Origin: Octopus vulgaris
Taxonomy: Eukaryota
Direction of reading: 5' to 3'
Length of the DNA stretch: 124,000 bases
Assembly: GCA_951406725.2 (NCBI GenBank)
Contig: OX597822.1
Coordinates: forward strand, 43,544,001 to 43,668,000
Numbering within the stretch: the stretch's first letter is position 1; every line of letters begins with the position of its first letter. The position numbers and the translations under genes are program-made. This document shows positions 18,901 through 123,636 of the stretch, one piece after another. The notes below the pieces were generated by a model. It was not told the origin of the DNA. It saw only the letters and a program-made list of their open reading frames with translations, and did no database searches.

Positions 18901-19419
18901 AACTTCCAGAAATCCCTGGCTTGGCAGTGCTATCGAGACGCACTACCTCTTCAAGAGAAGAGCTACAGGCACGGTTCGAAAACCATCACAGGACCGACCT
19001 GCCCGAGATGCGGTCAGAGCGACGAAACCGTTCTGCACGCACTCGTGCAGTGTCCAGATATTTCGGAGCTGTGGACCTTCGTCGAACAGCTGTTGTCACG
19101 TGTAGGTCGGGCCCGCCTATCGGCCGAGTCTGTCTTGAGTATTGTTCCACCATCTTCCTTTAAACGGGAAGGGAAAACGGTTTTCGTTACGCTGATGGCT
19201 ATGGCGAAAGAATGTGTGTGGTGGACGCGTTTGAAAGGACTGCAAACAAACACCTTCCTCTCTGGTCAGTCTCTCGTCAACTTTTTCAAGTACCACTTGA
19301 AAAGGAGGATGAGAATAGAGAGGAAGGCTTTGTCGAACGAATGTTCTAATAAAAAGTGGGTAAAAGTGGCAAAAATGGTCAGTATGAAAGACGACACTAT
19401 TATAAGCATAAATCTGTAA
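15976..19419 (+). pseudogene. LINE ORF2 (APE endonuclease, reverse transcriptase, C-terminal zinc finger), broken by stops and frameshifts
   Basis: Motifs GCVNVRGL, ISETRL, VGDWNA, SYLDRIL, GYWKLN, KSPGLDGLPYE, ITLLNADLKIL, SVRQGCPLS, AYADDV and CPRCGQSDETVLHALVQC across ORFs starting at 15976, 16284, 17003, 18181 and 18517. Confidence 0.9.
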
Positions 19420-25915: not shown

Positions 25916-26140
25916 TGTTTGTGTGTGTGTCTGTGTGTATATGTTTGTGTGTCTGTGTTCGTACGCCCAACATCGCTTGACAACCGATGCAGGTATATTT
26001 ACCTCCCGGTAACTCAGCGGTTCGGCAAAATAGACCGATAGAATAGTACTAGGCTTACAAAGAATAAGTCCTGGGGTCGATTTGCTCGACTGAAGTCGGT
26101 GCTCCAGCATTGCTGCAGTCAAATGACTGAAAGAAGTAAA
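25716..26140 (+). mobile_element. SINE family A
   Basis: Head, internal microsatellite and tail. Confidence 0.85.
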
Positions 26141-26239
26141 AGAAAAACGAATATACCTGCAAAGAAATGTCCGGCACGGCCGCGGTCTGATGACCTCCAG
26201 TACGTAGTTTTTCAAAGCCTGCTACTTACTGTATCGCTC

Positions 26240-29744: not shown

Positions 29745-29945
29745 TTGTGTGTCTGTGCTTGTCCCTGCAACATCGCTTGACAACCGATGGTGGTGAGTTT
29801 ACATCCCCGTAACTTAGCGGTTCGGCAAAAGAGACCGATAGAATAAGTACTAGGCTTACAAAGAATAAGTCCTGGAGTTGATTTGCTCGACTAAAGGCGA
29901 TGCTCCAGTATGGCCGCAATCAAATGACTGAAACAATAAAAGAAA
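29745..29945 (+). mobile_element. SINE family A tail
   Basis: catcgcttgacaaccgatgg...gactgaaacaataaaaga. Confidence 0.8.
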
Positions 29946-32363: not shown

Positions 32364-32560
32364 TTGTGTGTCTGTGTTTGTCCCCCCAACATCGCTTGAC
32401 AACCGATGCTGGTGTGTTTACGTCCCCGTTACTTAGAGGTTCGGCAAGAGAACCGATAGAATAAGTACTAGGGTTACAAAGAATAAGTCCTGGGGACTAT
32501 TTGCTCGACTAAAGGCGCTGTTCCATCATGGCCGCAGTCAAATGACTGAAACAAATATAA
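32116..32560 (+). mobile_element. SINE family A, full length
   Basis: ggcacaggagtggctgtgtgg head, (TA)(TG) centre and complete tail. Confidence 0.9.
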
Positions 32561-32925
32561 GAATAATTAGCTGATCCTCCTCTATTTTTTTTTGCCCAAA
32601 GTCAGCAACTTTTCAGCCTCCTCTCGTATATACAACGGGTTTCCATGCAGTTTCTGTGTACCGAATTTAATCGAAGCATTGCTTGGTCCGGGGCCATAGC
32701 CATAGACATGTACCCATGCTGAAGCACTGTGAGTTTCTACATGAAACCATGTATTAACATACTGAACCTCTTAATCACACAACCATGATTTCCACTGTTA
32801 GTTTGAATCAGCATCAAGTGTTGTGTTACTATGTATTCTTGACTGTGCGTGTCGTTATATATGTATACGTGTGTGTGTATATATATATATACACGCATAT
32901 ATCTATATATGTGTGTGTATATATG

Positions 32926-36180: not shown

Positions 36181-36417
36181 AAGGTATGAAGAGTAACGTC
36201 TGTTTTTTACGTTATAGTTATAGTAAAAATAGTTTGACATTAAACTGAAGATTTACCATTATTTTTTGTTGAAAACATATCTATGAAACATCTACATGAA
36301 GAGTGGTGGCACTGACTTCAAACATTTTGGCATGCTAACCCTCGATGGATAGATTGCCGAAGGCTAGTAGGCTTAATATTTGGAGTTACTGTCTCCACTA
36401 TTCTTGTAAAAGAATAA

Positions 36418-36515
<98 letters not shown>

Positions 36516-39500
36516 CGGGCCCTAAGGTCCATGTTTGGCGGACAGTTTAACATTTATTTCGCTCCCTGTCTGCCGAGGATGGGCGGTAGTGGCACCGCGG
36601 TACTTTTTCACAAGAGCCTGGATCTCGAAGTCAAGACGATATTCGTAGACCCGGAGGGTAGACTGGTCGTTCTGGATGTTGACGGCAGCAATGGGTGCGC
36701 TTTTCGACTCGTATCAGTCTACGCACCGCCCTTAACAGGTCGGGCGGATTTCTTTCGACGTCTAGAAGTATTCTTGGGAACGTCTCGTCCTTTACTCTTA
36801 GTGGGGGATTGGAATGCTACCTTGGACACGCATGTAGACTACGTGGGTAGAGACAGAAACAGAAGGGGATGCAAATGCCTCAGAGACCTGCTCAGACGAT
36901 TCCAACTGTCTGACAGGTACCGACTCGACCACCCAAATGCACCAACGTGGACATGGAGCAACCGCAGTGGGTCGTCGAGATCGTATCTAGATAGGATACT
37001 GTGTAGGACAGTAGACAAGGATAACTTAGGATGTCCACAATTCCACACAGTCAGCTACACGGATCACAAATTGGTGACGTGTACGCTAGACTTAGATAAG
37101 GCACATAGACAGGGTCCTGGGTACTGGAAACTGAACGCATCATTCCCGTCCAGACAAGTTTTCAGAGACCGGATTAGCACACTAGTAAAGAGGGCTTTGA
37201 CGGGAGCCATCATCAACAACAAATGGTGGTTTGCCCTCAAGAGAGCAGTAAAAGCAGAAGCGATTAGGTACAGCAAAGCACTAGCCATAGATAGAAATAG
37301 AGTAGAGGGTGAGCTAGTTAAGAAGCTAGAAGAGGCAATTAGAAGCGGCATCGCATCCGACGTTTTGGCGGCGAGGTTGGCCCTCGACCAACACTTCAAC
37401 GCCAAACACGAAGGATGTGCTGTCAGAGCTAGGATGCGTGCTCTAAGGAACGAAGGTGTTGGAGCCGCGAGAGAGGCCCGGGTGGCAGAGGCGCAACAGG
37501 GCAACAAAGCCACCATTCGGTCACTGGTAGATGAACAGGGGCGCGAATTGCTCGAGCCAAGTAAAATGTGTGAGGCCTTTCAGCAGCATTTTGCCCGACT
37601 GTTCGGGACGAGTGAAGGGCAAGAACGTAGGGTGGACTTCAGTGCCTACCTACATAGCCTGCCACGACTCTCGACAAGAAAGCAGGGTGCTGCGAAGGTG
37701 CCATCACGGCGGCGGGAGTGCGGGAAGCGATAGCAGAATGCTCGAGGGACAAATCACCGGGATTGGATGGTCTACCCTACGAGTTTTACAATTGTATGCC
37801 AGACTTGTTTGGAGACGTCTTGGCAGCGGTATACTGCAACTGGCAGCAAAACGGGAGCATACCCGGTTTTGTGAGTCGAGGAGCTGTAACTCTGCTGAAG
37901 AAAGATCCAAACAAGGGAAACATTATAGATAACTTTAGACCAATCACGCTGCTCAATGCAGACCTGAAAATTTTGACAAAGGTGTTAGCCAAGAGGTTGG
38001 CGCTTGTCATCAAGAAACTGGTCGACAACGCACAAACGTGCGCCGTGCCGGGCCGGAGCATCCATGACAACCTCCATCTGATGCGCTACATCATAGACAG
38101 GGTAGTTAACGAACCTGGCATGGGTGGGGCCCTGATCAACTTGGATCAATCGAAAGCCTTTGATAGGGTAGACCATCGATACTTGGAGGCAGTCCTGAGG
38201 GCGGCTGGTTTCGGTCCCGTCTTCCGCGGCTGGATAGCTGCCATGTACAGAGGCATCCGTTCGGTAATTCGCGTAAATGGACATCTATCGAGACCTTTCG
38301 ACATTGCACGTTCGGTCCGTCAGGGATGCCCCCTCTCGGCGCTTCTATACGTATTGACTCTTGAGCCACTACTGCGGAAGCTGGCGACTCTAAGGGGCAT
38401 CCCGCGAGAATTGGGATGCGGGACGAGCGTGTCTGCATACGCGGACGACGTCACCGTCATAGTGTCAAGCCACGAGCACATCGAGCGGGTCGGCGAGACA
38501 CTGAAAGACTACGAAGCGGTGACAGGAGCAAAAATCAACCGGGAAAAGACAGTGGGCTTGCGGCTCGGCACCTGGAGAAGCAAGCCCATGCCGTCCACCA
38601 GTACCTCCGTCGTGGGACGCTGGACAGACGGCCCGGTTGAGTTGCTCGGGGTCTGGTTCGGTCCGGACCTCCAAATGGAGAAGAACTGGAACGAGATAAC
38701 GAGTAGGGTGGTCACTCTCGCCCAGCAATGGGCCGAGAGGAAACTGTCCCTAAAAGGTCGGGCGGAGGTGGTGAACGCGTACATCGCGTCCATCATCTAC
38801 TACCGCCTGACCGTCGTACCTTGTCCCGACCCTACCATCACCAAACTAGAACGCATCCTCTTCCGCTTCTTGTGGAAAGGATGCGTCCCGATGGTCAGGC
38901 GATCCATTTGCTGTCAACACCCGTTAAAAGGAGGGCTGGGCATGCCGTGGTTGATGATGCGCAGACACGCGCTGAGACTGCGACATCTCCGGCTCTATGT
39001 AGACGACGGTGAACAGGTGTGGTCGCCGTTTGTGAGGCACGCATTCCCGCAACTCGTCTCCATGACCGAACTACAGTCGTGGATCAAAAAGAGGCCGAGG
39101 AAGGGCGAATGGCACCGCGAGTGTCGCGTTGCTCTCAAGCAACTCTGCCGTCCCGGGTCGACCTTGAGTGACTTCAACACAACCAAAGCATTCTATAGGG
39201 GATTAGTGGATGGGAGGTACGACGACGAGCTCGGAGCAAACCTGGGCGCCGACGAGGAATACCTGACCCGCCTGTTTCAAACGACTTTCGGCCCGGGACC
39301 TATGGACAACTTCCAGAGATCCCTGGCCTGGCGGTGCTACCGAGAAGCGCTACCCGTTCGGGATAAGCTCTACAGGCATGACTCAAGAAACACGGGGCCG
39401 ACCTGCCCGAGATGCGGGCAGAGCGACGAAACCGCTCTGCACGCAATCGTGCAGTGTCCAGCAATTTCCCACCTGTGGGCTTATGTCGAACGACTGCTGT

Positions 39501-39739
39501 CACGTGTGGGACGTGTCGGTTTATCAGCCGAGTCTATCGTTAATATCGTCACGCCTCCTTCCTTCAAACGGGAAGGAAGAGCTATTTTTATCATACTTGT
39601 GGCTATGGCGAAAGAATGTATCTGGTGGACGCGCCTGAAAGGATTAGAGACAAACACTTTCCTCTCTGGTCAATCTCTCATCAACTTCTTCAAGTATCAC
39701 TTGAAGAGGAAAGTGAGTAGAGAGGCAAGTTTTGTCTAG
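36516..39739 (+). pseudogene. LINE ORF2 (EN-RT-zinc finger), near intact: one frameshift near 37700 and a small 3' indel
   Basis: ORF to 37733 holds the EN motifs (VGDWNA, SYTDHKLV, GYWKLN). The 673-aa ORF 37718-39739 holds RT (QGCPLS, YADD) and CPRC...HAIVQC. Confidence 0.9.
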
Positions 39740-41957: not shown

Positions 41958-42150
41958 TCTCTGTTTGTCTTGACAACCGATAGTGGTGTGTTTACGTCCC
42001 CTTAACATAGCGGTTCGGGGCAAAAGGAACCAATAGAATAAGTACTAGGCTTACGATGAATAAGTCCTGGGGTCGATTTGCCCGACTAAAGGTGGTGTTC
42101 CAGCATGGCCGCAGTCAAGAGACTGAAACAAGTAAAAGAATAAAAGAATA
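41958..42150 (+). mobile_element. SINE family A tail
   Basis: cttgacaaccgatagtggtgtg...gactgaaacaagtaaaaga. Confidence 0.8.
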
Positions 42151-42154
42151 CAAT

Positions 42155-43098
42155 AAGACACCTACTCTAAAAACACTAACTTATGTACTCACATACAACC
42201 CCAGAAACAAAGAAACATTTAACATCTTTGCCCCAAATCTCCCAATACTCCATAAGGACCCGACGCTGAAGGCTATTTTACATACGCATAATACTATTAA
42301 AAGCAGTAGACAACCAAATACATTTGAGATCCTCACGAATGCTAAATTATTCTCAAGAATAACAGATGCAACAGTAAAACAATGTGGTCGACCTAACTGC
42401 GGAACAATCTTCTGGAAGGGCAAACATTCAAATTAAATCCAACTTCACTTGCGCCTCTGAAAACCTCCTTTATGTAATAAGATGCTCGGGCTGCTATAAA
42501 ACCTACACAGGTTCTACAAGAATGTCTATCCGACGAAGATGTAATGCTCACAGGCAACAGATATCTTCTCCACTATATGGCCAGATATATCTCAGTGAAC
42601 ACATTGACAGATGTGCAGAACAACTTCAACTACAATTCCTTATCTTCCTGTTATATCAGTTTGCTATTTGGACCTCAACTCAAGTGCGACTAAATAAAGA
42701 GACCTCGCTTATCAAAAAATATAAGCCAGATTGAAATATATTTACGAGTAAATATTTATCACGTGTATTGGATATAATATCGATATAAGCCAGACTCAAA
42801 TACAAATCAATATTAAAAATTTCAGATTAACCTCCCCTTCACTGAAAAATACCTTGTTTACCAATTATCCCTCCTAGCAAACCAAATCTCTAACTCCGAA
42901 TTGTATTCAACACTCAAACTTTGAAAAGCAATAGCGAAACCTGTTATTATGTTAGAAGAGAAAAGTCTTATTTTGTATAATATTGTATAATACTTTTGCT
43001 TTGATGATTCTTTAGTCTTGTAGAACAAATGTTTTTTTTCATTTTTTCTTTCTTTGAATATTCAACCACGTTGAATTAATAACCATCCTTTCTATCTC

Positions 43099-43100
<2 letters not shown>
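42155..43100 (+). mobile_element. Penelope-like element 3' fragment: linker, GIY-YIG endonuclease and 3' UTR
   Basis: TYNPRNK...CGRPNCGT, then FTCASENLLYVIRCSGCYKTYTGST...HRQQI...RLNKETSLIKKYKP; ends in (TA)n. Confidence 0.8.
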
Positions 43101-43159
<59 letters not shown>

Positions 43160-43989: not shown

Positions 43990-44355
43990 ATGAAGATCAA
44001 AAGCTAAATATCAAAGGGCAAAGAAGATCAAAAGCTAAAGATCAAAGGCTAAAGAGACTGAAGATCAAAAGAGAAGATCAAAAGTTAAAGATTAAAAGTT
44101 AAGGATACTGACGATCAAAAGCGAAAGAAGATCAAAAGCTAAAGATCAAAAGTTAAAGATCAAAAGCTAAAGATCAAAAGCTAAAGATCGAAAGTTAAAG
44201 ATCAAAAGTTAAGAATTCTGACGATCAAAAGCGAAAGAAGATCAAAAGCTAAAGATCAAAAGTTAAAGATTAAAAGTTAAAGATTAAAAGTTAAGGATGC
44301 TGACGATCAAAAGCGAAAGAAGATGAACTGCTAAAGATACTGAAGATCGAAAGTT
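43990..44355. repeat. 13-bp minisatellite (aagatcaaaagct/aagatcaaaagtt) with variants
   Basis: Direct inspection. Confidence 0.9.
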
Positions 44356-46124: not shown

Positions 46125-46189
<65 letters not shown>

Positions 46190-46221
46190 ATATATACATA
46201 CATATATACATACATACATAA

Positions 46222-46267
<46 letters not shown>

Positions 46268-46436
46268 CATAAGGGACTAAAGCCATCTGAATATGGCTAG
46301 GGACAGGGCAGGGTGGTGGGGGTGTTACTGTTGCATTTAGCCCCAGGCGAACATCGACGTCACCAGATAGGCCCGACACCGTCACGGTGTCCTTTAACCT
46401 GCAAAGGGAGGTAATTCCCCGATGAAGCGGAAACCA

Positions 46437-46482
46437 CACACGGACCATGGTTTCAAGGTGTATTGCCTATCGTCGGCGTGTG
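46437..46482 (-). ncRNA. Type I HHR, CCGACGA core
   Basis: Minus strand CACACG-CCGACGA-TAGGCAATACACCTT-GAAA-CCATGG-TC-CGTGTG. Confidence 0.65.
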
Positions 46483-46843
46483 GTAGGCTTCCGCTTCCTC
46501 GACGAATTCTCACTCTGCAGGATATTCATATATAGATTTTCAAGCAAAATACATTTGCTGATTTCGAAAATCTGTTCGAAAGCAATAATAATTCTCTAAA
46601 AGAGATATAGACAGTAACTGCTCGATAACATAAGGGACTAAAGCCATCTGAATATGGCTAGGGACAGGGCAGATTCAGATGGCTTTAGTCCCTTATGTTA
46701 TCGAGCAGTTACTGTCTATATCTCTTTTAGAGAATTATTATTGCTTTCGAACAGATTTTCGAAATCAGCAAATGTATTTTGCTTGAAAATCTATATATGA
46801 ATATCCTGCAGAGTGAGAATTCGTCGAGGAAGCGGAAGCCTAC

Positions 46844-46889
46844 CACACGCCGACGATAGGCAATACACCATGAAACCATGGTCCGTGTG
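46844..46889 (+). ncRNA. Type I HHR, CCGACGA core
   Basis: CACACG(46844-49)-CCGACGA(46850-56)-TAGGCAATACACCAT-GAAA(46872-75)-CCATGG-TC(46883)-CGTGTG. Confidence 0.6.
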
Positions 46890-47204
46890 TGGTTTCCGCT
46901 TCATCGGGGAATTACCTCCCTTTGCAGGTTAAAGGACACCGTGACGGTGTCGGGCCTATCTGGTGACGTCGATGTTCGCCTGGGGCTAAATGCAACAGTA
47001 ACACCCCCACCACCCTGCCCTGTCCCTAGCCATATTCAGATGGCTTTAGTCCCTTATGTTATCGAGCAGTTACTGTCTATATCTCTTTTAGAGAATTATT
47101 ATTGCTTTCGAACAGATTTTCGAAATCAGCAAATGTATTTTGCTTGAAAATCTATATATGAATATCCTGCAGAGTGAGAATTCGTCGAGGAAGCAGAAGC
47201 CTAC

Positions 47205-47250
47205 CACACGCCGACGATAGGCAATACACCTTGAAACCATGGTCCGTGTG
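47205..47250 (+). ncRNA. Type I HHR, CCGACGA core
   Basis: Same motif 361 bp downstream; predicted cleavage after 47244. Confidence 0.65.
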
Positions 47251-47465
47251 TGGTTTCCGCTTCATCGGGGAATTACCTCCCTTTGCAGGTTAAAGGACAC
47301 CGTGACGGTGTCGGGCCTATCTGGTGACGTCGATGTTCGCCTGGGGCTAAATGCAACAGTAACACCCCTACCAACCTGCCCTGTCCCTAGCCATATTCAG
47401 ATGGCTTTAGTCCCTTATGTTATCGAGCAGTTACTGTCTATATCTCTTTTAGAGAATTATTATTG

Positions 47466-47503
<38 letters not shown>

Positions 47504-49730: not shown

Positions 49731-50245
49731 GTATATATATATGTATATATATATATATGTATGTATATATTTATGTATGTATATATTTATGTATGTATAT
49801 ATAAAGGGAGAATTCACAAAAAAAAAACAAAAGACGAAGAGAGATGGTGTAGACAACAAACAGATGTCTTAGTATAACACTAAGTGAAAAATCATTTAAC
49901 GTTTCGAGCCTACGCTCTTGCACAGAAAGGAACACAGGAAGAAACAAGGAGAGAAAATAAAGAACGTGTAGTGGCTAGCGATCTATCATGCCGAATGCCG
50001 AACAGAAGGGTCACACAGGAGAGCTAGGGAGAAGGGGAGATGTACATGATTGTTTGTCTGTGTTTGTTCCCTAATCATCACTTGACAACCGATGCTGGTG
50101 TGTTTATGCCGTAGTAACTTAGCGGTTCAACGAAAGATACCTGTAGAATAAGCACTAGGTTTACAAAGAATAAGTTCTGGGGTCGATTTATTCGACTAAA
50201 GGCGGTATACCAGCATGGCCACATCAAATGACTGAAACAAATAAT
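49525..50245 (+). mobile_element. SINE family A split by an approximately 250-bp PLE-like insert (49800-50045) in its internal (TA)n
   Basis: Head at 49525-49670 and tail at 50050-50245. The insert carries an HHR-like motif at 49894-49929 (-). Confidence 0.7.
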
Positions 50246-50419
50246 TGGGTAAAACAGAATGTGATATCTTACTTTGCGCAGATATTAAGCAGATAGTGCA
50301 CGTGAAAGTTTTCAAGTTTCCTTACGTTTGTTGATGGGTGTCCATACTTCTGCGACAGAGAAATTGTGCTCAAAATACAAAATTTGTATATGCTTATTAT
50401 AGTTTTCAAACTTACATTG

Positions 50420-56791: not shown

Positions 56792-57205
56792 TTGTAAAGT
56801 AACGATTGTTTGCGAACCTGATGTGGCAGCCCTATTTTGGGGCGAATGCTACTGTTGTTTAGTCCCAGGAGACATCGACTCCAGCTGGCTATACGACACA
56901 CTATCTGTGTCTCTATATTTTCGAACAAGAGAGGTATACCCCCCACCCAGCACAAAGCAGTATCGTACGGTTTCAGACGAAAAGTTATTCAGTTCCGACG
57001 AAGAGAACACCCCCTGAAACTGTACGGTCAACAAATATTGCTTTGTTCTGGGATGGGGTGCTAATCTTCCCTTTTAGAAAATATGAGGACATAGACCATG
57101 TGTCGTATAGACAGCTGGAGACGATTTTTCGGTGGGCTAAAGAACAGTAGCAATCGCGCCAATGTAGGACTGCCACATCAGGTTGGCAATAAGGTTTGTA
57201 ACTTA
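56790..57205. mobile_element. Diverged fold-back element (about 165-bp inverted arms) with a CCGA-core HHR-like motif at 56992-57032
   Basis: cctgatgtggcagccct.../...ggactgccacatcagg mirror pair. The motif reads GTT-CCGACGA-AGAGAACACCCCCT-GAAA-CTGTACGG-TC-AAC. Confidence 0.6.
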
Positions 57206-57234
57206 ATATCACTCGTTGAGAGATTTAGGAACAA

Positions 57235-59432
57235 CCATCACTCTGCTTAATGCAGACTTGAAAATTTTGGCCAAGGTGTTAGCCAAGAGGTTGGCGCTTG
57301 TCATCGAGAAACTGGTCGACAAGGCGCAAACGTGCGCCGTGCCGGGCCGGACCATCCATGACAACCTCCACCTGATGCGCTACATCATAGACAGGGTAGT
57401 TAACGAACCTGGCATGGGTGGGGCGCTGATCAATTTGGATCAATCGAAAACTTTCGATAGGGTAGACCATCGATACTTGGAGGCAGTCCTCAGAGCGGCT
57501 GGCTTCGGTCCCGTCTTCCGCGGCTGGATAGCCGCTTTGTACAGAGGCATCCGTTCGGTAATTCGCGTAAATGGACATCTATCGAGACCTTTCGACATCG
57601 CACGTTCGGTCCGTCAGGGATGCCCCCTCTCGGCGCTTCTATACGTATTGACTCTCGAGCCACTACTGCGGAAGCTGGCGACTCTGAAGGGCATCCCGCG
57701 AGAACTGGGATGCGGGACGAGTGTGTCTGCATACGCGGACGACGTCACCGTCATAGTGTCTAGCCACGAGCAGGTCGGCAAACACTGAAAAACTACGAAG
57801 CGGTGACAGGAGCAAAAATCAACCTGGAAAAGTCAGTGGGTTTGCGACTAGGCACCTGGAGAAGCAAGCCCATGCCGTCCACCAGCGCCTCCGTTGTGGG
57901 ACGCTGGATCGACGGTCCGGTCGAGTTGCTCGGGGTCTGGTTCGGTTCGGACCTCCAAATGGAGAAGAACTGGAACGAGATAACGAGTAGGGTGGTCTCT
58001 CTCGCCCGGCAATGGGCCGAGAGGAAACTGTCCCTAAAAGGTCGGGTGAAGGTGGCGAACACGTACATCGCGTCCGTCATCTATTACTGCCTGACCGTCG
58101 TGCCTTGTCCCAACCCTACCATCACCAAACTAGAACGCATTCTCTTTTGCTTCTTGTGGAAAGGATGCGTCCCGATGGTCAGGCGATCCATTTGCTGTCA
58201 ACACCCGTTAAAAGGAGGATTGGGCATGCCGTGGTTGATGATGCGCAGACACGCGCTGAGACTGCAACATCTCAGGCTTTTCGTAGACGAAGGTGAACAG
58301 GTGTGGTCGCCGTTTGTGAGGCTCGTCTCCATGACCGAACTGCAATCGTGGATCAAAAAAAGGGCGAGGAAGGGCGAATGGCACCGCGAGTGTCGCGTTG
58401 CTCTCAAGCAACTCTGCCGTCCTGGGTCAACCTTGAGTGACTCCATCACAACCAAAGCATTCTATAGGGGATTAGTGGAGGGGAGGTACGACGACGAGCT
58501 CGGGGCGAACCTGGACGTCGACGAGGAATACCTGACCCGCCTGTTCGGGACGACTTTCGGGCCAGGGCCCATGGACAACTTCCAGAGATCCCTGGCCTGG
58601 CAGTGGTACCGAGAAGCGCTACCTGTTCGGGATAAGCTCTACAGACACGGCTCGAGAAACACGGGGCCGACCTGCCCGAGATGTGGTCAGAGCGACGAAA
58701 CCGTTCTGCACGTACCCGTGCAGTGTGCAACAATTTCCGACCTGTGGGCTTATGTCGAACAACTGCTGTCACGTGTGGGACGAGTCGGTTTAGTAGCTGA
58801 GTCTATCGTCAATATTGTCACGCCTCCTTCCTTCAAACGGGAAGGAAGAGCTATTTTCATCATCCTTGTGGCTATGGCGAAAGAATGTATCTGGTGGACG
58901 CGTCTGAAAGGATTGGAAACAAACACCTTCCTCTCTGATCACCCTCTCATCAACTTCTTCAAGTACCACTTGAAAAGGAAAGTGAGAGTAGAAAGGCAAG
59001 TTTTGTCTAGCGAATGTTTTAAAAAAAGATGGGTGAATGTAGCAAGGATGGCACGTGGATGGCAAGGATGTAACAAGAATGGTCTATTTCGTAGGCTTTT
59101 CTTCCCACGGATAAACCTTACTTGCTTTCCCCTTTACACCATACATCATGACACTGTGATACACGATCCCTATTGATCGTTTTCTTTTCCTCTTCCCCCC
59201 TTTTTTCCGCTTTTTCTTCTTTTTTCATTTTTCTCTTCCTTTGTTCCTTTTCCCTTTTTTCTTATTTTCTTTTCCTTTTTTTTTTGTTCTTTTTTCCCTT
59301 TTACGATCCCTTTTGATCGAAAACCTACGCCACCCTTTTTTTTAATTCTTTTTTTTTTCATCCCCCAACAGAAAAGCTCTACCTTGTAACTTGTCCCATG
59401 TGTGTGCAGCCCTGTGTGGCCAATAAAGAAAC
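57235..59432 (+). mobile_element. Tx1/L1-clade LINE, 5'-truncated within RT, copy d
   Basis: ORFs at 57216 and 57803 closely match copy c; ends aataaagaaac followed by (TATC)n. Confidence 0.9.
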
Positions 59433-59496
<64 letters not shown>

Positions 59497-59562
59497 ATAT
59501 ATATATATATATATATATACATAACATACACACACACGCGCGCGCTCATACACGCACACATA

Positions 59563-60000
59563 TAGGCGCTAGAAGGTCTGTGTGTTAAGAAGCTTGCTTT
59601 CCAACGACATGTTTCCGGGTTCAGTCCAACTGCATAGCAATTTGGGCAAGTGTCTTCTACTATACACTTGGGCCGGCCAAACCCTTGTGAATGGATTTGG
59701 GTGACGGAAACAGAAAGAAGCCCTTCGTATATATACATATGTGTGTGTGTGTGTATACATACATATATATATATATATGTATATATGTATATATATATAT
59801 ACGTATGTGTGTATCTGTGTTCCCCAACCATCGCTGGACAACCGATGTTGCTGTGTATACGTCCTCGTCACATAGCTGTTCGGCAGAAAGAGACCGACAG
59901 AATAAGTACTAAGCTCACAAAGAATAAGTCCTTGGGTGGATTTGTTCGACCAAAGGCGGTGCCCCAGCATGGCCGCAGTGAAAAACTGAAACATGTAAAA
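59563..60000 (+). mobile_element. SINE family A, full length, diverged
   Basis: Head, microsatellite and tail. Confidence 0.8.
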
Positions 60001-60623
60001 GGATGTGTATATATATATATATATATATATATTTGCATGTATGTATATATGTATGCATGCATATATGTCTATTTATTTTATGTATAATCATATCCATGCA
60101 GATATAGAAAATTCTACTTTCACCCAAACTTCTTCTCTCATCGGCGCAGGATACTACAATTATGAATAATTGTATATTAAATTTTGTAACGAGTAGAGGA
60201 GAGCAAAGATCACAGGTTGCTAACGCGGCAAGTGATATCACAACATAGAAAAACCGTAAAATATTGACCAGTGGTCGTTGCTTTAAAACTATTTATATTA
60301 ATGATTTTTGCCTCGTGTTCGTCCCACGATACTCCCCCAGCCCATATCCAATATCTTGTCGCTAACCGTATATCGCTAAAAGCCTGCTATTAGCCATTAA
60401 CATTAAGCATTAACCTGCGTTCCAACTGCAGTCAGGCCCCTAAAGTGGTTAGCAGAATTTCCATCTAGCTATTAGAGTGGTCATCTCCGGTCAAACGTTG
60501 AAGCGTTGATCGGAGATATCGTTTTGTAACCCTTGCCTGGCTTTGATCCCATTATTGACTTCATGAAATGTTGTCAGTTGGAATAGAGTTCATACAGTCA
60601 CGTGATAATGACCATCCATCCAC

Positions 60624-60708
<85 letters not shown>

Positions 60709-60825
60709 GGTCTGTCTATCTATTCATCCATCCATCAGTTCCAAATTCGGTGTGTTGGTGAGGCAATTCCTTGTATATATGTATATATATATACGTATGT
60801 GTGTATCTGTGTTCCCCAACGATCG

Positions 60826-60922
<97 letters not shown>

Positions 60923-61006
60923 TACTCACCCATAAACATACAAATAAAAGTGCATACATGTTCACATGCTCAATCTCGGTCATTAAGTGTCTGTGTAGTA
61001 GGGCGC

Positions 61007-61051
<45 letters not shown>

Positions 61052-61084
61052 AATCTATCTATCTATCTATCTATCTATCTATAT

Positions 61085-61220
61085 TGTTCTTTTCTTCCTT
61101 TTACGATCCCTCTTGATCGAAAACCTACGCCGCCCCCCTTTTTTTTCATCCCCCAAAAGAAAAGCTCTACCTTGTAACTTGTCCCATCTGTGTGCAGCCC
61201 TGTGTGGCCAATAAAGAAAC
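61085..61220 (+). mobile_element. Tx1 3' UTR fragment e between (TATC)n arrays
   Basis: Shares specific variants with the end of copy d (aaaacctacgcc, aaagaaacttatc). Confidence 0.85.
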
Positions 61221-61297
<77 letters not shown>

Positions 61298-61298
61298 A

Positions 61299-61387
<89 letters not shown>

Positions 61388-61414
61388 ACTATCTATCTAT
61401 CTATCTATCTATCT

Positions 61415-61600
61415 CAAAAAAAAAAGGAAAAAAGAGAGCCACTTACTGTAATGTTTTTTTTTACATGACACTATTGCCCAAGGTTCCCGTGGTCTTTTTT
61501 CTTTTTTCTTTCTTTCATTTTTCTCTTCTTCCCAAGGAGAAAAGCTCTACTTTGTATTTTGTCCCTTCTGTGTTAGGCCCTGCGTGTCCAATAAAGAAAC
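61415..61600 (+). mobile_element. Tx1 3' UTR fragment f between (TATC)n arrays
   Basis: Resembles the 3' UTR of copy a; ends aataaagaaac followed by (TATC)n. Confidence 0.85.
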
Positions 61601-61601
61601 A

Positions 61602-61711
<110 letters not shown>

Positions 61712-62350
61712 ACTATCCTTCGACCATTCTATCTGTTTCTCTATCTGTCTATCTCTGTATTTTGTCTGTCTATTTGTCTATCTCGATTTGTACATTTGTA
61801 CACGCATATATCTCTACATATATATGCGTTTCTATAAATAGGCATACACACATGCACGCACACATACACCCATACACACACATACATACACACACACACA
61901 CACGTTTGGGGCTTCGTGTCTCAGCTAGAGACTATTACGTAATTATTTGTAATCCAATTATCAGTGAATTATTATCAAATTTAATTGTCTCCTCGCAAAG
62001 TCGTTCTAATCTCTCCTCACTTACCCGTTACAGTGTGTAAACATCTGAGGAGGTTTGCATAATTGCTACAGTACTTACCAAACATAAAACGTGCTGCCAA
62101 ATGCCGCCCTATAATTTTTAAACTAATTTAAATTTATGTCCCCTGTTTGGTGGCTGGATTGACAGATGTAGGGAGAGAGGGCAATAAAGGGATAGCTGGA
62201 TAATAACCATAGTATCAGTTTGTCAGGCTTGAGTATGAAGCTAGAAAGTGTAATGTCGGTTGTTTTAAAAAGAGGACCTTAGGTAGGCGGTTCCTGTGGA
62301 CTCCACATCAACTATCCACGATCCTTGACGGGAATAGTGGGCGGTGAAAA

Positions 62351-77544: not shown

Positions 77545-77609
<65 letters not shown>

Positions 77610-77813
77610 TCTTTTAATTGTTTCAGTCAGTTGACTGCGGCCATGCTGGAGCACCGCCTTTAGTCGAGCAACTCGACGCCGGGACTTATTCTTTGTAAGC
77701 CCAGTACTTATTCTATCGGTCTCTTTTGCCGAACCGCTAAGTGACGGGGACATAAACACACCAGCATCGGTTGTCAAGCAATGCTAGGGGGACAAACACA
77801 GACACACAAATAT

Positions 77814-80429: not shown

Positions 80430-83996
<3,567 letters not shown>

Positions 83997-84014
83997 ATTA
84001 TTATTATTATTATT

Positions 84015-111735: not shown

Positions 111736-111946
111736 TTTCTTTTTACTTGTTTCAGTCATTTGACTGCTGCCATGCTGGAGCACCGCCTTTTAGTCGAGCA
111801 AATCAACCCCGGGACTTATTCTTTGTAAGCCCAGTACTTATACTATCGGTCTCTTTTGCCGAACCGCTAAGTGACGGGGACGTAAACACACCAGCATCGG
111901 TTGTCAAGCAATGCTAGGGGGTACAAACACAGACACACAAACACAT

Positions 111947-121829: not shown

Positions 121830-122285
121830 CAAAAATAAATCTCTGAACGAGGTATAAACAGTAGCTACACGACATCGTGAAGTATATTTGCCACTTAAAT
121901 GTGGCTAACCCTTAAGGGTGGATGCTACTGTAGCTTGTAGCCCCAGGAGGACACCTCTTCCAGCTGGCTATTGACACACTTTCTGTACCTTATCAGTATT
122001 TTCAAAGGGAAGCCATCGTTCTCGTCCTCAACCTATGATACACACGGACTCGAGTTTCTGGGTATTGACCCGTCATCAGCGTATGAAAATCACTGGCTGT
122101 CGATGAAAAGTAAGCCTCCCTTTGCAAATATATATCCTTTTTCCAGTGACAAAAAGTCACTGATGTCGAAAAAGTGTAAACAAGCAAAAATATATCTCTG
122201 AGCGAGGTATAAACGGTAGCTGCACTACATCGTGAAGTATATGTGTCACTTAAATGTGGCTAACCCCTAAGGGTTACCCACATGA
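121828..122285 (-). mobile_element. Candidate non-LTR retrozyme: 355-nt monomer, about 1.3 copies, with a terminal fold-back
   Basis: gcaaaaata.atctctga occurs at 121829 and 122184. The right end is a hairpin atgtggctaaccc/gggttacccacat; the left end is in (TA)n. Confidence 0.8.
122041..122085 (-). ncRNA. Type I hammerhead motif, canonical core
   Basis: CATACG-CTGATGA-CGGGTCAATACCCA-GAAA-CTCGAG-TC-CGTGTG; ACTCGAGT palindrome and GUC site. Confidence 0.75.
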
Positions 122286-122296
122286 TATATATATAA

Positions 122297-122340
<44 letters not shown>

Positions 122341-123269
122341 AGGTGGAAATCCACGCCACCATCTCTTCAGTTGTCCGGAAAAATGCTATGAAAAATGACC
122401 GTTATACAAAGGGAAATTACTGTGTGATTGACCGTTATTAAGACAAAAGAGCTATTTGAATGACCACTAAGTGAGGGGTGGGAGTAAAAGTAAGTGGGTA
122501 AAAATAGATCATAGTATTCGCGTTAGCGCGCATGTTCATAGTTGCACACGCGCGCCCGCACACACACGTGCGTGAACCTAAAAGTACACATTCATCCACC
122601 CTCACTTGAAAACCTACACATCCTCACTCGCACCATTCGCAAATGTATATACATACAAACCCCACCACTCACACGCGCACCATAAGGGTTCATACACACA
122701 TCTATATACGCACAAGCACAAGAAAATACAGGGCTAAGGGTAACAATACAGAAAAAAGGTATAAGGGTGTATACAAAGAGAAAACCACGTATATATACGC
122801 ACATACACTTATGCATGCACACACACGCTTATATTGCACATACCCGCACACGTTCATATACACACACACAAGCACGCGCTAAAAGGATCATACATACGTC
122901 TATATGCGCACACACACAAGAAAAAACAGGGCTAAAGGCAAAAATACAGGAAAATGTGTAAAAACACTGAGTAAAATACGTCTATATACACACGTACTCG
123001 CATGCTCGCACACACGCACACATCTATATACGCACATACCCGCACACACGCACACATCCACACGTGCGCACAAAAGATAACATAGACACGATTATATAGG
123101 CACAGGGAAAAATGCAGGGCGGAGGGTAGAATACAGAAATATTATATGTAAAAAATATATAAGCAATAAACCTATAAACGTCACGATGTGTTGCAGCTAC
123201 TGTTTATAACTCGCTCTAAGATTTATTATTGCTTCTTTACACTTATTCGATATCAGTGTCTTTACGATA

Positions 123270-123460
123270 CTGTAAAAAGTATATGTATTTGTGAAGGGAA
123301 CCTACTTTTCATCGACAACTGTGATTGTCACACACCGATGACGGGTCAATATCCAGAAACTCGAGTCCGTGTGTATCATAAGTTGGAGACGGAAAGTATG
123401 GCTTCCCTTTGCAAATACTGATAGGGCGCACAAAGTGTGTCTATAGCCAGAAAGTGTGTC
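123270..123460 (+). mobile_element. Partial monomer of the 355-nt family with a CCGATGA-core HHR at 123329-123373
   Basis: CACACA-CCGATGA-CGGGTCAATATCCA-GAAA-CTCGAG-TC-CGTGTG. Confidence 0.75.
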
Positions 123461-123636
123461 TAAAGAGACCGGTAGAATAAGTACTAGCCTTACAAAGAAT
123501 AAGTCCTGGGGTCGATTTGCTCGACTAAAGCTGGTGCTCCAGCATGGCCACAGTCAAATGACTGAAGCAATTAAAAGAGTATATATATATATATATATAT
123601 GCATATATACACATATGTATATATATATACATATAC

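What the first reader, a model, noticed from the sequence alone, without database searches (positions are those of the whole stretch)
46264..47467. 361-nt self-cleaving tandem element: candidate cephalopod non-LTR retrozyme (circular RNA)
Seen: an exact 361-bp monomer in 3.3 near-identical copies, one type I hammerhead per monomer (GUC sites after 46883, after 47244 and at 46443 on the minus strand), no credible ORF, and insertion in (TA)n. Stem I extends into a rod of about 45 bp (cctgcagagtgag-aattcgtcgaggaagcggaa...cacacg pairing with cgtgtg...ttccgcttcatcggggaatt-acctccctttgcagg). Further hairpins are gacaccg/cggtgtc, agccat/atggct and ttcgaa/ttcgaa. Established: tandem small non-coding units with minimal type I HHRs (newt satellite 2, Schistosoma Sm-alpha, cricket pDo500, metazoan non-LTR retrozymes) are transcribed, self-cleave into monomers that can circularise, and are thought to be mobilised by Penelope-like elements. 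Inference: read-through of the two plus-strand HHRs would release exactly one 361-nt monomer. The head-to-head inversion at 46672/46673 resembles PLE 5' inversions.
Basis: partly seen in the sequence, partly recalled or inferred. Interest (0 to 1): 0.88.

Follow-up and report, generated by a model that had tools for sequence, protein, structure and literature searches.

The report
Octopod retrozyme-like repeat with variant hammerhead
This is a young, non-coding 361-bp mobile repeat that a Penelope-like retrotransposon apparently pasted into a (TA)n microsatellite; each unit carries a hammerhead-ribozyme motif with a changed core base, so it is a new member of the known "retrozyme" class whose self-cutting is doubtful.

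Summary
There is a 361-bp unit in 2.2 direct copies (46673-47467) plus a 1.13-unit inverted arm (46264-46672). Only 4 substitutions occur in 1204 bp, there is no credible ORF, and (TA)n lies on both sides.

Each unit has a type I hammerhead-like motif at the tip of a ~45-bp rod. The motif is not canonical: U4 is C in all three copies, helix II opens with U·U, and the middle copy has a further helix II defect. Rfam reports no hammerhead, but it also misses two internal controls, so that negative carries little weight.

Homology supports the motif. A related element at 121830-122286 has a canonical CUGAUGA core at the same place. The rod, helix II and an 8-nt helix III palindrome covary between the families.

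The layout matches Penelope-like element (PLE) insertions: 3' ends facing outward, a 5' inverted copy, a 44-nt extension at one end and a (TA)n target. [quoted passage not shown]

Verdict: a non-autonomous, PLE-mobilised, non-LTR retrozyme-like element in an octopod-like genome. It is a new member of a known kind. Release of a 361-nt circle from this locus is unproven and looks disfavoured.

The parts
46131..46266 (.). Left (TA)n / (TA-CA) microsatellite, part of the target site
   Evidence: TRF and regex tracts; sequence
46264..46672 (-). Inverted arm: 1.13 units in - sense, with its 3' end facing outward and ending ...CCCUUAUGUUAU next to (TA)n. It carries the consensus sequence of the array.
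   Evidence: the repeat finder I1/I2, 99% complementary; per-position comparison
46434..46483 (-). Hammerhead-like motif 1: CCACACG|CCGACGA|U AGG CAAUACA CCU U|GAAAC CAUG GUC^CGUGUGUGG. Predicted cut between 46443 and 46442.
   Evidence: Descriptor hit with one core mismatch; coordinates
46657..46672 (.). Head-to-head junction of the inverted and direct arms. It lies next to the conserved hairpin AGCCAU-AUUCAG-AUGGCU.
   Evidence: 13-nt spacer between the arms of I2; sequence
46673..47467 (+). Direct array of 2.2 units of 361 bp, with its 3' end ...AUUAUUGCU next to (TA)n
   Evidence: TRF score 1562, 99% matches
46801..46934 (+). Rod-plus-hammerhead domain of the middle unit: helix I extended to about 45 bp
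   Evidence: Fold -66.9 kcal/mol, z = -8.3; covariation with relatives
46843..46892 (+). Hammerhead-like motif 2, predicted cut 46883/46884. A private T>A at 46870 reduces helix II to 2 bp and creates a competing CCAUG....CAUGG hairpin over GAAA.
   Evidence: it fails the descriptor
47162..47295 (+). Rod-plus-hammerhead domain of the last full unit
   Evidence: Fold -58.1 kcal/mol, z = -7.6
47204..47253 (+). Hammerhead-like motif 3, predicted cut 47244/47245
   Evidence: Descriptor hit with one core mismatch
47424..47467 (+). 44-nt 3' extension present on the direct array but absent from the outer end of the inverted arm. It is comparable to the 30-40 bp one-sided 'tail' of PLE insertions, or it marks the true 3' terminus if the inverted arm was primed internally at UAU.
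   Evidence: Sequence comparison of the two outer ends; PLE tail described in PMC8557442
47467..47502 (.). Right (TA)18, the other half of the target microsatellite
   Evidence: TRF
121830..122286 (-). Relative B: 1.27 units of ~355 bp with (TA)n on both sides. Its core is canonical, CUGAUGA...GAAAC-UCGA-GUC^ (122079-122047). Its 3' end is co-terminal with A (...UUUUUGCU), and a short inverted piece sits at its 5' end.
   Evidence: nhmmer B against A over the full length, E = 4e-27; strict descriptor hit; sequence
123150..123450 (+). Relative C: 83% identical to B, with core CCGAUGA (C4 again) at 123335-123367. Its 3' part is replaced by a SINE-like repeat, followed by (TA)n.
56800..57130 (-). 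Relative D: an older, diverged copy. It keeps the rod and a decayed CUGAAUA...GAAAC remnant (56992-56960) and ends in (TC)n(TA)n.
   Evidence: nhmmer E = 7e-9 to B; sequence
42142..43102 (+). 5'-truncated Penelope-like element, a candidate for the class of mobilising partner. [quoted passage not shown] Its 3' end abuts (TA)n at 43103-43158.
   Evidence: Pfam GIY-YIG 23.2 bits; 716 relatives, the long ones matching at their C-terminus; RVT_1 + GIY-YIG in P0137 and P0140; CX4CxxC linker; homologous 3' UTR with an intact minimal hammerhead in L009

Best explanation
The locus is one recent insertion of a ~361-nt non-coding, non-autonomous retroelement of the metazoan 'non-LTR retrozyme' kind.

How it was inserted (inferred):
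- It was integrated into a (TA)n microsatellite by the reverse transcriptase and GIY-YIG endonuclease of a Penelope-like element.
- cDNA synthesis was primed at both nicked strands of the target. The two copies therefore have their 3' ends outward and meet head-to-head in the middle.
- One copy ran 2.2 units and the other 1.13 units. The RNA template was thus longer than one unit, either an uncleaved multimer or, more economically, a circular monomer copied by rolling-circle reverse transcription.
- Both cDNAs stopped at the same unit phase, beside a conserved hairpin.

What each unit carries (shown):
- In the sense strand there is a type I hammerhead of the newt/axolotl/PLE style.
- Helix III is 2 bp closing a palindromic tetraloop. 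With its flanks it forms the 8-nt palindrome ACCAUGGU, implying a dimeric 'double hammerhead'.
- The motif sits at the tip of a ~45-bp extended helix I.

What is in doubt:
- In this family's recently active master copy the core has C4 instead of U4, and helix II starts with U·U.
- Self-cleavage is therefore predicted to be weak at best, and the middle copy is probably dead.

Status of each step: the anatomy, the relatives, the covariation and the PLE fragment are shown. PLE mobilisation, the circular template and any cleavage are inferred.
For: Array and youth:
- 361-bp period with an inverted arm.
- 4 substitutions in 1204 bp, with the inverted arm equal to the consensus.

Family:
- B, C and D are colinear relatives (nhmmer E = 4e-27, 2e-10 and 7e-9).
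- Each lies at (TA)n, although (TA)n>=8 tracts cover only 3.0% of the window.
- The A-direct and B 3' ends are co-terminal. The 5' ends of A-direct, A-inverted and B fall at the homologous phase.

Hammerhead:
- B has a strict core. A has 12 of 13 conserved core positions.
- No other hit occurs in 248 kb, and shuffles give 0 strict and 0.05 one-mismatch hits.
- On the hammerhead structure 86% of cells pair, against 34-52% in slid controls. Nine pairs carry compensatory double changes, against 0-3 in controls.
- Helix II pair 10.2-11.2 is A-U in A and G-C in B and C.
- Native rod duplexes score -59, -45 and -54 kcal/mol. Cross-family chimeras score -25 to -37.
- The helix III palindrome changes from ACCAUGGU to ACUCGAGU and stays palindromic.
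- Two B domains co-fold into a double hammerhead as the minimum-free-energy structure.
- Motif polarity equals template polarity in every copy.

RNA structure:
- The circular fold is -120.6 kcal/mol, 64% paired, z = -6.7.
- Linear folding is asymmetric between strands, z = -5.4 against -2.4.

PLE link:
- Partial tandems, an inverted 5'-truncated copy, a one-sided 30-40 bp tail and a (TA)n bias are the published PLE insertion signature (PMC8557442).
- A canonical EN+ PLE 3' end lies in (TA)n at 42142-43102.
- Its relative L009 has a minimal hammerhead 178 nt before a 3' end in (TA)n. The same distance is 223 nt in A and 217 nt in B.

Literature:
- Mussel retrozymes have units of 350-390 bp, and the axolotl HHR_Amex2 has a U·U at the base of helix II (PMC7229834).
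- U·U is the best-tolerated 10.1-11.1 mismatch, and U4C is a known natural viroid variant (PMC3088659).
- Retrozymes have been argued to be PLE derivatives (10.64898/2026.07.22.740005).
Against: - No Rfam hammerhead hit at any threshold. This is weak evidence, because B and the PLE hammerhead of L009 are also missed.
- U4C lies in the CUGA turn, where single mutants show low activity (PMC9901934). It 'considerably decreases activity in vitro' (PMC3088659).
- The hammerhead fold costs +8.8 to +13.4 kcal/mol over the minimum-free-energy fold in A, against +5.0 in B.
- C4 creates a GCC/GGC hairpin that competes with helix II, even in the dimer.
- The insertion ends are not at the cleavage site.
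- No autonomous PLE sharing sequence with the unit was found. The 3' UTR of the local PLE fragment is unrelated.
- Only three to four independent lineages were available, all from one window.
- No expression data are available.
Confidence: 0.7

Rival explanations
1. The element is a PLE-dependent non-autonomous repeat whose hammerhead is only a relic. It is mobilised like the HHR-less Naiad PLEs and their derivatives, from linear read-through transcripts. There is no self-cleavage and no circular RNA, and the rod is kept for another reason, such as recognition by the reverse transcriptase.
For: - The recently active master copy carries C4 plus U·U.
- C4 is shared by lineage C.
- The hammerhead fold is disfavoured and a competing GCC/GGC hairpin forms.
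- Insertion ends ignore the cleavage site.
- Naiads proliferate without canonical hammerheads and also target (TA)n (PMC8557442).
- C4 sits in a CpG, so B's canonical U4 could have arisen by deamination in a dead copy (inference).
Against: - Twelve of thirteen conserved core positions are kept.
- The helix II pair is kept by a compensatory change, and the helix III palindrome was rewritten yet stays palindromic between families. That argues for selection on the hammerhead fold at least until the A and B/C lineages split.
- U4C and U·U are both documented in natural, biologically viable hammerheads.
Confidence: 0.2
2. It is not an independent element. It is a rearranged, 5'-truncated terminal repeat (pLTR) of an autonomous coding PLE.
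For: - PLE insertions are mostly 5'-truncated and leave terminal repeats.
- The distance from the hammerhead to the 3' end resembles that in a real PLE 3' UTR.
- Xenopus retrozymes are sister to PLE pLTRs.
Against: - The array holds 2.2 + 1.13 complete 361-bp units with exact periodicity and no coding remnant.
- None of the four related insertions in the window has any adjoining PLE ORF.
- The only PLE fragment in the window has an unrelated 3' UTR.
Confidence: 0.07
3. It is a DNA-level product: either a satellite or fold-back palindrome made by replication or recombination inside an unstable (TA)n tract, or a TA-targeting DNA transposon (MITE) with long inverted repeats.
For: - The inverted arms are 409 nt long.
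- TA is the target of Tc1/mariner elements, and a mariner-type transposase ORF exists somewhere in the window.
- (TA)n tracts are very abundant here.
Against: - The two outer termini differ by 44 nt, and the arms are unequal at 1.13 and 2.2 units.
- Relative B has the same 3' terminus but no long inverted partner.
- Strand-specific RNA structure and motif polarity follow the outward 3' ends.
- The dispersed relatives share a phase-specific 5' end.
Confidence: 0.03

Closest known systems
Metazoan non-LTR retrozymes (Cervera & de la Peña 2020, PMC7229834), especially the mussel units of 350-390 bp and the axolotl Rtz_353 / HHR_Amex2
   Same: - Short non-coding tandem unit (361 bp) with GC 46%.
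- Highly self-paired RNA.
- Sense-strand type I hammerhead with a 2-bp helix III plus tetraloop and a U·U at the base of helix II.
- A PLE is present in the same genome.
   Different: - The core has C4 instead of U4.
- The array is very short (2.2 units) with an attached inverted copy.
- A clear (TA)n target and phase-specific ends are visible.
- Expression and circularity are unknown.
- The host appears to be an octopod, for which my library searches found no paper describing a retrozyme.
Newt satellite 2 and PLE minimal hammerheads that act as dimers
   Same: Helix III is too short to stand alone, and its loop and flanks form a palindrome (ACCAUGGU; ACUCGAGU in relatives; ACCGGU in the PLE L009). 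Two tandem motifs can therefore build one long helix III.
   Different: - Helix I is extended into a ~45-bp rod.
- Helix II has a non-canonical closing pair.
Penelope-like element insertions (Neptune/Nematis-type with a CX2-5CxxC linker; Naiads for (TA)n targeting), PMC8557442
   Same: - Partial tandem.
- Adjacent inverted 5'-truncated copy.
- One-sided extension of about 40 nt.
- Insertion into (TA)n.
- Hammerhead roughly 200 nt from the 3' end.
   Different: - No RT or GIY-YIG ORF, so it must be mobilised in trans.
- No sequence similarity to the one PLE 3' end found nearby.
Natural U4C hammerhead variant of a viroid (cited in Perreault et al. 2011, PMC3088659)
   Same: The same core substitution, in an RNA that is still biologically viable.
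   Different: - Here it is combined with a U·U closing mismatch.
- It also creates a competing hairpin.
- Activity is untested.

Membership tests
Hammerhead ribozyme, type I | Conserved core C3 U4 G5 A6 N7 G8 A9 ... G12 A13 A14 ... A15.1-U16.1, H17 | tested here: not met
   All three copies read CCGACGA, so U4 is C. The other 12 conserved positions are present. Relative B meets the core in full.
Hammerhead ribozyme, type I | Three-way junction with helix I open-ended, helix II and helix III closed, and the cut after H17 leading into helix I | tested here: met
   Helix I is 6 bp and extends into a ~45-bp rod. Helix II is 3 bp and helix III is 2 bp plus a CAUG loop. Pairing is kept across the families.
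Hammerhead ribozyme, type I | G10.1-C11.1 closing pair of helix II | tested here: not met
   It is U·U in A and C·A in B and C. U·U has natural precedents (PMC3088659; PMC7229834).
Hammerhead ribozyme, type I | Match to the Rfam hammerhead covariance models | tested here: not met
   No hit at the gathering threshold, at E<=1 or at E<=10. The test is insensitive here: B (canonical core) and the PLE hammerhead in L009 are also missed.
Hammerhead ribozyme, type I | Site-specific self-cleavage | not testable with these tools
   Thermodynamics only. The hammerhead fold costs +8.8 to +13.4 kcal/mol over the minimum-free-energy fold in A. Dimer co-folding forms helix III, but a GCC/GGC hairpin competes.
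Metazoan non-LTR retrozyme | Short (150-450 bp) head-to-tail repeats, low GC, no ORF, no LTR/PBS/PPT | tested here: met
   361 bp in 2.2 copies. GC is 46%. The 89-aa ORF has no homologue.
Metazoan non-LTR retrozyme | A functional type I hammerhead in every unit | tested here: inconclusive
   A motif is present in every unit but with U4C and U·U. The middle copy is further damaged.
Metazoan non-LTR retrozyme | Dispersed multicopy family co-existing with autonomous PLEs | tested here: met
   Three related insertions (B, C, D) and one PLE 3' fragment lie in the same 124 kb. Genome-wide copy number could not be measured.
Metazoan non-LTR retrozyme | Expressed as monomeric linear and circular RNA | not testable with these tools
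   There are no transcript data. The predicted circle is 64% paired with z = -6.7.
PLE-type insertion (trans-mobilised) | Partial tandem plus an adjacent inverted 5'-truncated copy, with 3' ends outward | tested here: met
   compared with the description in PMC8557442.
PLE-type insertion (trans-mobilised) | One-sided 30-40 bp tail | tested here: inconclusive
   A 44-nt extension (47424-47467) is present at one end only. It could instead reflect internal priming of the other arm at UAU.
PLE-type insertion (trans-mobilised) | Microsatellite, here (TA)n, target bias | tested here: met
   A, B, C, D, the local PLE fragment and L009 all end in (TA)n. Such tracts cover 3.0% of the window.
Autonomous Penelope-like element | ORF with reverse transcriptase and GIY-YIG endonuclease | tested here: not met
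   No such ORF lies in or next to the array. It is therefore not an autonomous PLE.

The most novel reading that the evidence does not exclude
A retrozyme family that was mobile very recently (4 substitutions in 1204 bp) has as its master a hammerhead with U4C plus a U·U closing pair. This leaves two possibilities. Either the doubly deviant hammerhead still works in vivo as a dimer, which widens the functional sequence space of natural hammerheads. Or self-cleavage is dispensable for PLE-mediated mobilisation of retrozymes. In either case the insertion, more than one unit long with phase-specific 5' and 3' ends away from the cleavage site, would be a structural footprint of rolling-circle reverse transcription of a circular RNA by PLE machinery at (TA)n.
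Probability: 0.3. Interest if true: 0.65.

Novelty: new member of a known kind. Interest (0 to 1): 0.45.

Why it matters
Non-LTR retrozymes are known from cnidarians, mussels, amphibians and other animals. Their dependence on Penelope-like elements has been argued mainly from co-occurrence and from pLTR similarity in Xenopus, and the authors note that invertebrates were not examined.

This locus adds three things:
- An apparent octopod example.
- A clean, young insertion whose geometry is the published PLE insertion signature: outward 3' ends, an inverted 5' copy, a one-sided extension and a (TA)n target. That is direct structural evidence for how such units are integrated.
- A recently active family with a core-variant hammerhead. 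This makes it testable at the bench whether ribozyme activity is needed for retrozyme spread.

Tried and rejected
- Rfam scans of the locus, the whole window, relatives B and C and the PLE relative L009 gave no hammerhead hit anywhere. I treat this as an insensitive test for hammerheads with a truncated helix III, not as refutation.
- I used the 89-aa ORF of the unit as a handle to find other copies among called proteins. No homologue was found.
- A pattern scan for the conserved hammerhead block (CAATA..GAAAC....GTCCGTGTGT) was run on three collections. In metagenome and prokaryote-genome contigs the hits were all chance matches or one bacterial gene without a CUGANGA core. Viral contigs gave none.
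- I fetched octopod-like DNA around LINE relatives (Argonauta hians locus L004, and L005). Neither holds a copy of the family.
- I fetched contigs of PLE endonuclease relatives. L010 and L011 are too short to show a 3' UTR. L009 was informative.
- I looked for an intact hammerhead in the 3' UTR of the local PLE fragment. Only a decayed remnant is present (42919-42946), with poor helix I.
- Locating the GIY-YIG ORF took six Pfam calls. The other ORFs are LINE parts or have no match.
- I considered and rejected the DNA transposon/fold-back and solo-pLTR readings (see rivals).
- A Pol III A/B-box reading of GGCTTTAGTCC...TTCGAA near the 5' boundary occurred to me. I did not test it, so I make no claim.
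Full report
**1. What is there**

TRF finds a 361-bp period at 46673-47467, in 2.2 copies with 99% matches. The repeat finder adds a 409-nt inverted arm at 46264-46672 that is 99% complementary to the direct units. The whole structure is 1204 bp, or 3.33 units.

A position-by-position comparison shows only four variable sites and no indels. These are 46870 T>A in the middle unit, and 47195 G>A, 47369 C>T and 47374 C>A in the last unit. The inverted arm equals the consensus. The units were therefore almost certainly identical when the structure formed, and it is young.

(TA)n abuts both ends, at 46131-46266 and 47467-47502. The longest ORF is 89 aa and has no relative among 5.8 billion protein clusters. 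GC is 46%, against 38% for the window.

**2. RNA structure**

- The + strand monomer folds at -119.6 kcal/mol with z = -5.4. The - strand gives z = -2.4.
- As a circle it folds at -120.6 kcal/mol, is 64% paired and gives z = -6.7.
The rod-plus-tip domain has z = -7.6 to -8.3.

**3. The hammerhead claim**

At the tip of the rod the sequence reads:

CCACACG | CCGACGA | U-AGG-CAAUACA-CCU-U | GAAAC-CAUG-GUC^CGUGUGUGG

The motif differs from a canonical hammerhead in three ways:
- Position 4 is C, not U, in all three copies.
- Helix II opens with U10.1·U11.1 and has only three pairs.
- The middle copy lost the A-U pair through 46870 T>A. The same change created a CCAUG....CAUGG hairpin that covers GAAA.

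Rfam reports no hammerhead at the gathering threshold, at E<=1 on 6 kb, or at E<=10 on 181 nt. That test proved insensitive for this subtype. It also misses a relative with a fully canonical core. And it misses a bona fide-looking minimal hammerhead in a PLE 3' UTR.

I therefore wrote a descriptor. It requires helix I of at least 5 bp, the CUGANGA core and helix II of at least 3 bp, and it tolerates a 10.1/11.1 mismatch. It also requires GAAA, helix III of at least 2 bp and UH.
- In both strands of the window the only strict hit is the relative at 122079-122047.
- The only one-mismatch hits are copies 1 and 3 of this array.
- Forty dinucleotide shuffles gave 0 strict and 0.05 one-mismatch hits per window.

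The motif is not a chance match.

**4. Relatives in the same window**

nhmmer shows three related elements:
- B (121830-122286, - strand) has 1.27 units of ~355 bp. It is colinear with A over the full length (E = 4e-27).
- C (123150-123450, + strand) is 83% identical to B.
- D (~56800-57130, - strand) is an older fragment.

Each ends in (TA)n, and B has (TA)n on both sides. (TA)n tracts of at least 8 repeats cover only 3.0% of the window.

B has CUGAUGA...GAAAC-UCGA-GUC. C has CCGAUGA, so C4 occurs again. D keeps only a decayed CUGAAUA...GAAAC.

Several features covary between the families:
- On the hammerhead structure 86% of cells pair, against 34-52% when partners are slid. Nine pairs show compensatory double changes, against 0-3 in the controls. 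The caveat is that there are only three lineages and the structure was derived from A.
- Helix II pair 10.2-11.2 is A-U in A and G-C in B and C.
- The rod arms are only ~55-60% identical between A and B/C. Native arm duplexes score -59, -45 and -54 kcal/mol, whereas cross-family chimeras score -25 to -37.
- Helix III with its flanks is an 8-nt palindrome in both families, ACCAUGGU against ACUCGAGU. Four central positions are rewritten and palindromy is kept. This only makes sense for an intermolecular or tandem 'double hammerhead', as in newt satellite 2 and PLEs.
- Two B domains co-fold into exactly that structure as the minimum-free-energy fold, with ddG = -6.5 kcal/mol.

The hammerhead identity of the family is well supported.

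**5. Is this locus likely to cut itself?**

Evidence that it may cut poorly:
- The hammerhead fold costs +8.8 kcal/mol over the minimum-free-energy fold in copies 1 and 3, and +13.4 in copy 2. In B it costs +5.0.
- In the A dimer the 8-bp helix III forms. However, C3-C4 pair with the 5' strand of helix II as a GCC/GGC hairpin that B cannot make.
- Single mutants in the CUGA turn have low activity (PMC9901934).
- U4C 'considerably decreases activity in vitro' (PMC3088659).

Evidence that it may still work:
- U4C nevertheless permits viroid infectivity (PMC3088659).
- U·U is the best-tolerated 10.1-11.1 mismatch (PMC3088659).
- U·U occurs in the axolotl retrozyme motif HHR_Amex2, which has a 2-bp helix III plus tetraloop just like this one (PMC7229834).

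The ribozyme is therefore at best attenuated. Releasing the 46884-47244 monomer needs the most damaged copy to cut.

C4 is not a private defect of the locus. It was in the master copy of a family that moved very recently. Because C4 lies in a CpG, B's canonical U4 could even be a deamination product. With (D:U, A:C, B:U, C:C) parsimony cannot decide the ancestral state.

**6. How it got there**

Both arms have their sense 3' ends facing outward against (TA)n, and they meet head-to-head at 46672/46673.
- The direct arm ends ...AUUAUUGCU. This is co-terminal with B's ...UUUUUGCU.
- The inverted arm ends 44 nt earlier, at ...GUUAU.
- The 5' ends of A-direct, A-inverted and B fall within ~20 nt of the same unit phase. 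They lie beside a hairpin that is itself conserved by covariation, AGCCAU/AUGGCU in A and GCCAC/GUGGC in B.

Craig et al. (PMC8557442) describe what PLE insertions look like:
- partial tandems
- an adjacent inverted 5'-truncated copy
- a 30-40 bp tail at one end
- a strong microsatellite bias, with (TA)n for Naiads and a bias hypothesised for Neptune through the CX2-5CxxC linker

The window contains a PLE:
- ORF 42378-42731 matches GIY-YIG (23.2 bits).
- It has 716 relatives in a 1.84-billion-protein library. The full-length ones (718-773 aa) align at their extreme C-terminus and carry RVT_1 plus GIY-YIG.
- Their linker is CX4CxxC, and the window copy reads CGRPNCGTI.
- This 5'-truncated copy (42142-43102) ends directly in (TA)n at 43103-43158.
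- A 58%-identical relative (L009) also ends in (TA)n. It carries a minimal hammerhead, CGCUAA|CUGACGA|...|GAAAC-CG-GUU^UUAGCG with the palindrome ACCGGU, 178 nt before its 3' end. In A and B the hammerhead lies 223 and 217 nt before the 3' end.

The unit is thus built like a PLE 3' region and was inserted like a PLE, but it has no ORF. This fits the recent proposal that animal retrozymes are non-autonomous PLE derivatives (10.64898/2026.07.22.740005). No sequence similarity links the unit to this particular PLE's 3' UTR, so the actual partner is not identified.

**7. Template**

Every insertion is longer than one unit (1.13, 1.27 and 2.2 units) and contains intact cleavage sites. The ends are phase-specific but lie away from the cleavage site. 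A hammerhead-cleaved linear monomer cannot be the template. An uncleaved multimer or a religated circle copied by rolling-circle reverse transcription can. This is inference.

**8. Host**

The best named relative of a LINE reverse transcriptase in the window is an Argonauta hians protein at 65% identity. That supports an octopod source indirectly. My literature searches for retrozyme or hammerhead together with octopus or cephalopod returned only the Craig et al. PLE paper and unrelated work.

**9. Verdict**

- The reading as a 'retrozyme' is right as to kind and integration.
- The hammerhead is a core variant.
- Circle production from this locus is unproven and disfavoured.
- It is a new member of a known class, with a modestly interesting twist.

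Noticed in passing
121830-122286 (-) and 123150-123450 (+): Two diverged relatives (B and C) of the 361-bp unit lie back to back, with their 5' ends facing each other. About 800 bp of CA-rich sequence (122340-123150) and a (TA)n tract separate them. B has a canonical CUGAUGA hammerhead core and C has CCGAUGA. They may be the two arms of one old inverted insertion that was later split.
   Followed up: partly
56800-57130 (-): An older, decayed member of the same superfamily. The rod is kept and the hammerhead is degenerate. It ends in (TC)n(TA)n.
   Followed up: partly
42142-43102 (+): A 5'-truncated Penelope-like element. It has a CX4CxxC-type linker, a frameshifted C-terminal GIY-YIG endonuclease and a 370-nt 3' UTR with a decayed hammerhead remnant (42919-42946). 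Its 3' end lies in (TA)n.
   Followed up: yes
e.g. 123450-123582, 77607-77761, 29816-29941, 42016-42141, 111741-111864, 26020-26143, 32445-32563, 50130-50250: An abundant SINE-like repeat of ~125-150 nt (...GGGGTCGATTTGCTCGACTAAAGC...CAGCATGGCCACAGTC...) has at least 17 copies in the window. Several lie next to (TA)n tracts. One copy truncates relative C and another abuts the PLE fragment.
   Followed up: no
whole window: (TA)n is extremely frequent: 108 tracts of at least 8 repeats, covering 3.0% of the 124 kb. These tracts seem to act as landing pads for several repeat families.
   Followed up: partly
36339-39739 (+); also 16251-19416 (+), 57207-62037 (+), 80878-86552 (-): Several LINE copies carry an AP-endonuclease, RVT_1 and zf-RVT domains. 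The one at 36-40 kb has two long, nearly intact ORFs of 462 and 673 aa.
   Followed up: partly
43990-44340: A minisatellite built from variants of GATCAAAAGCTAAA / GATCAAAAGTTAAA.
   Followed up: no
protein P0010 (public record, not in the window): A protein labelled 'MAG: zinc-binding domain-containing protein [Herbaspirillum sp.]' is 62% identical to the octopod-type LINE ORF of the window. This probably reflects animal DNA contamination in a public bacterial MAG.
   Followed up: no
window, ORF not located (outside the 2134-49868 ORF subset): One ORF of at least 110 aa matches the mariner-type Transposase_1 family (PF01359, E = 2e-21).
   Followed up: no
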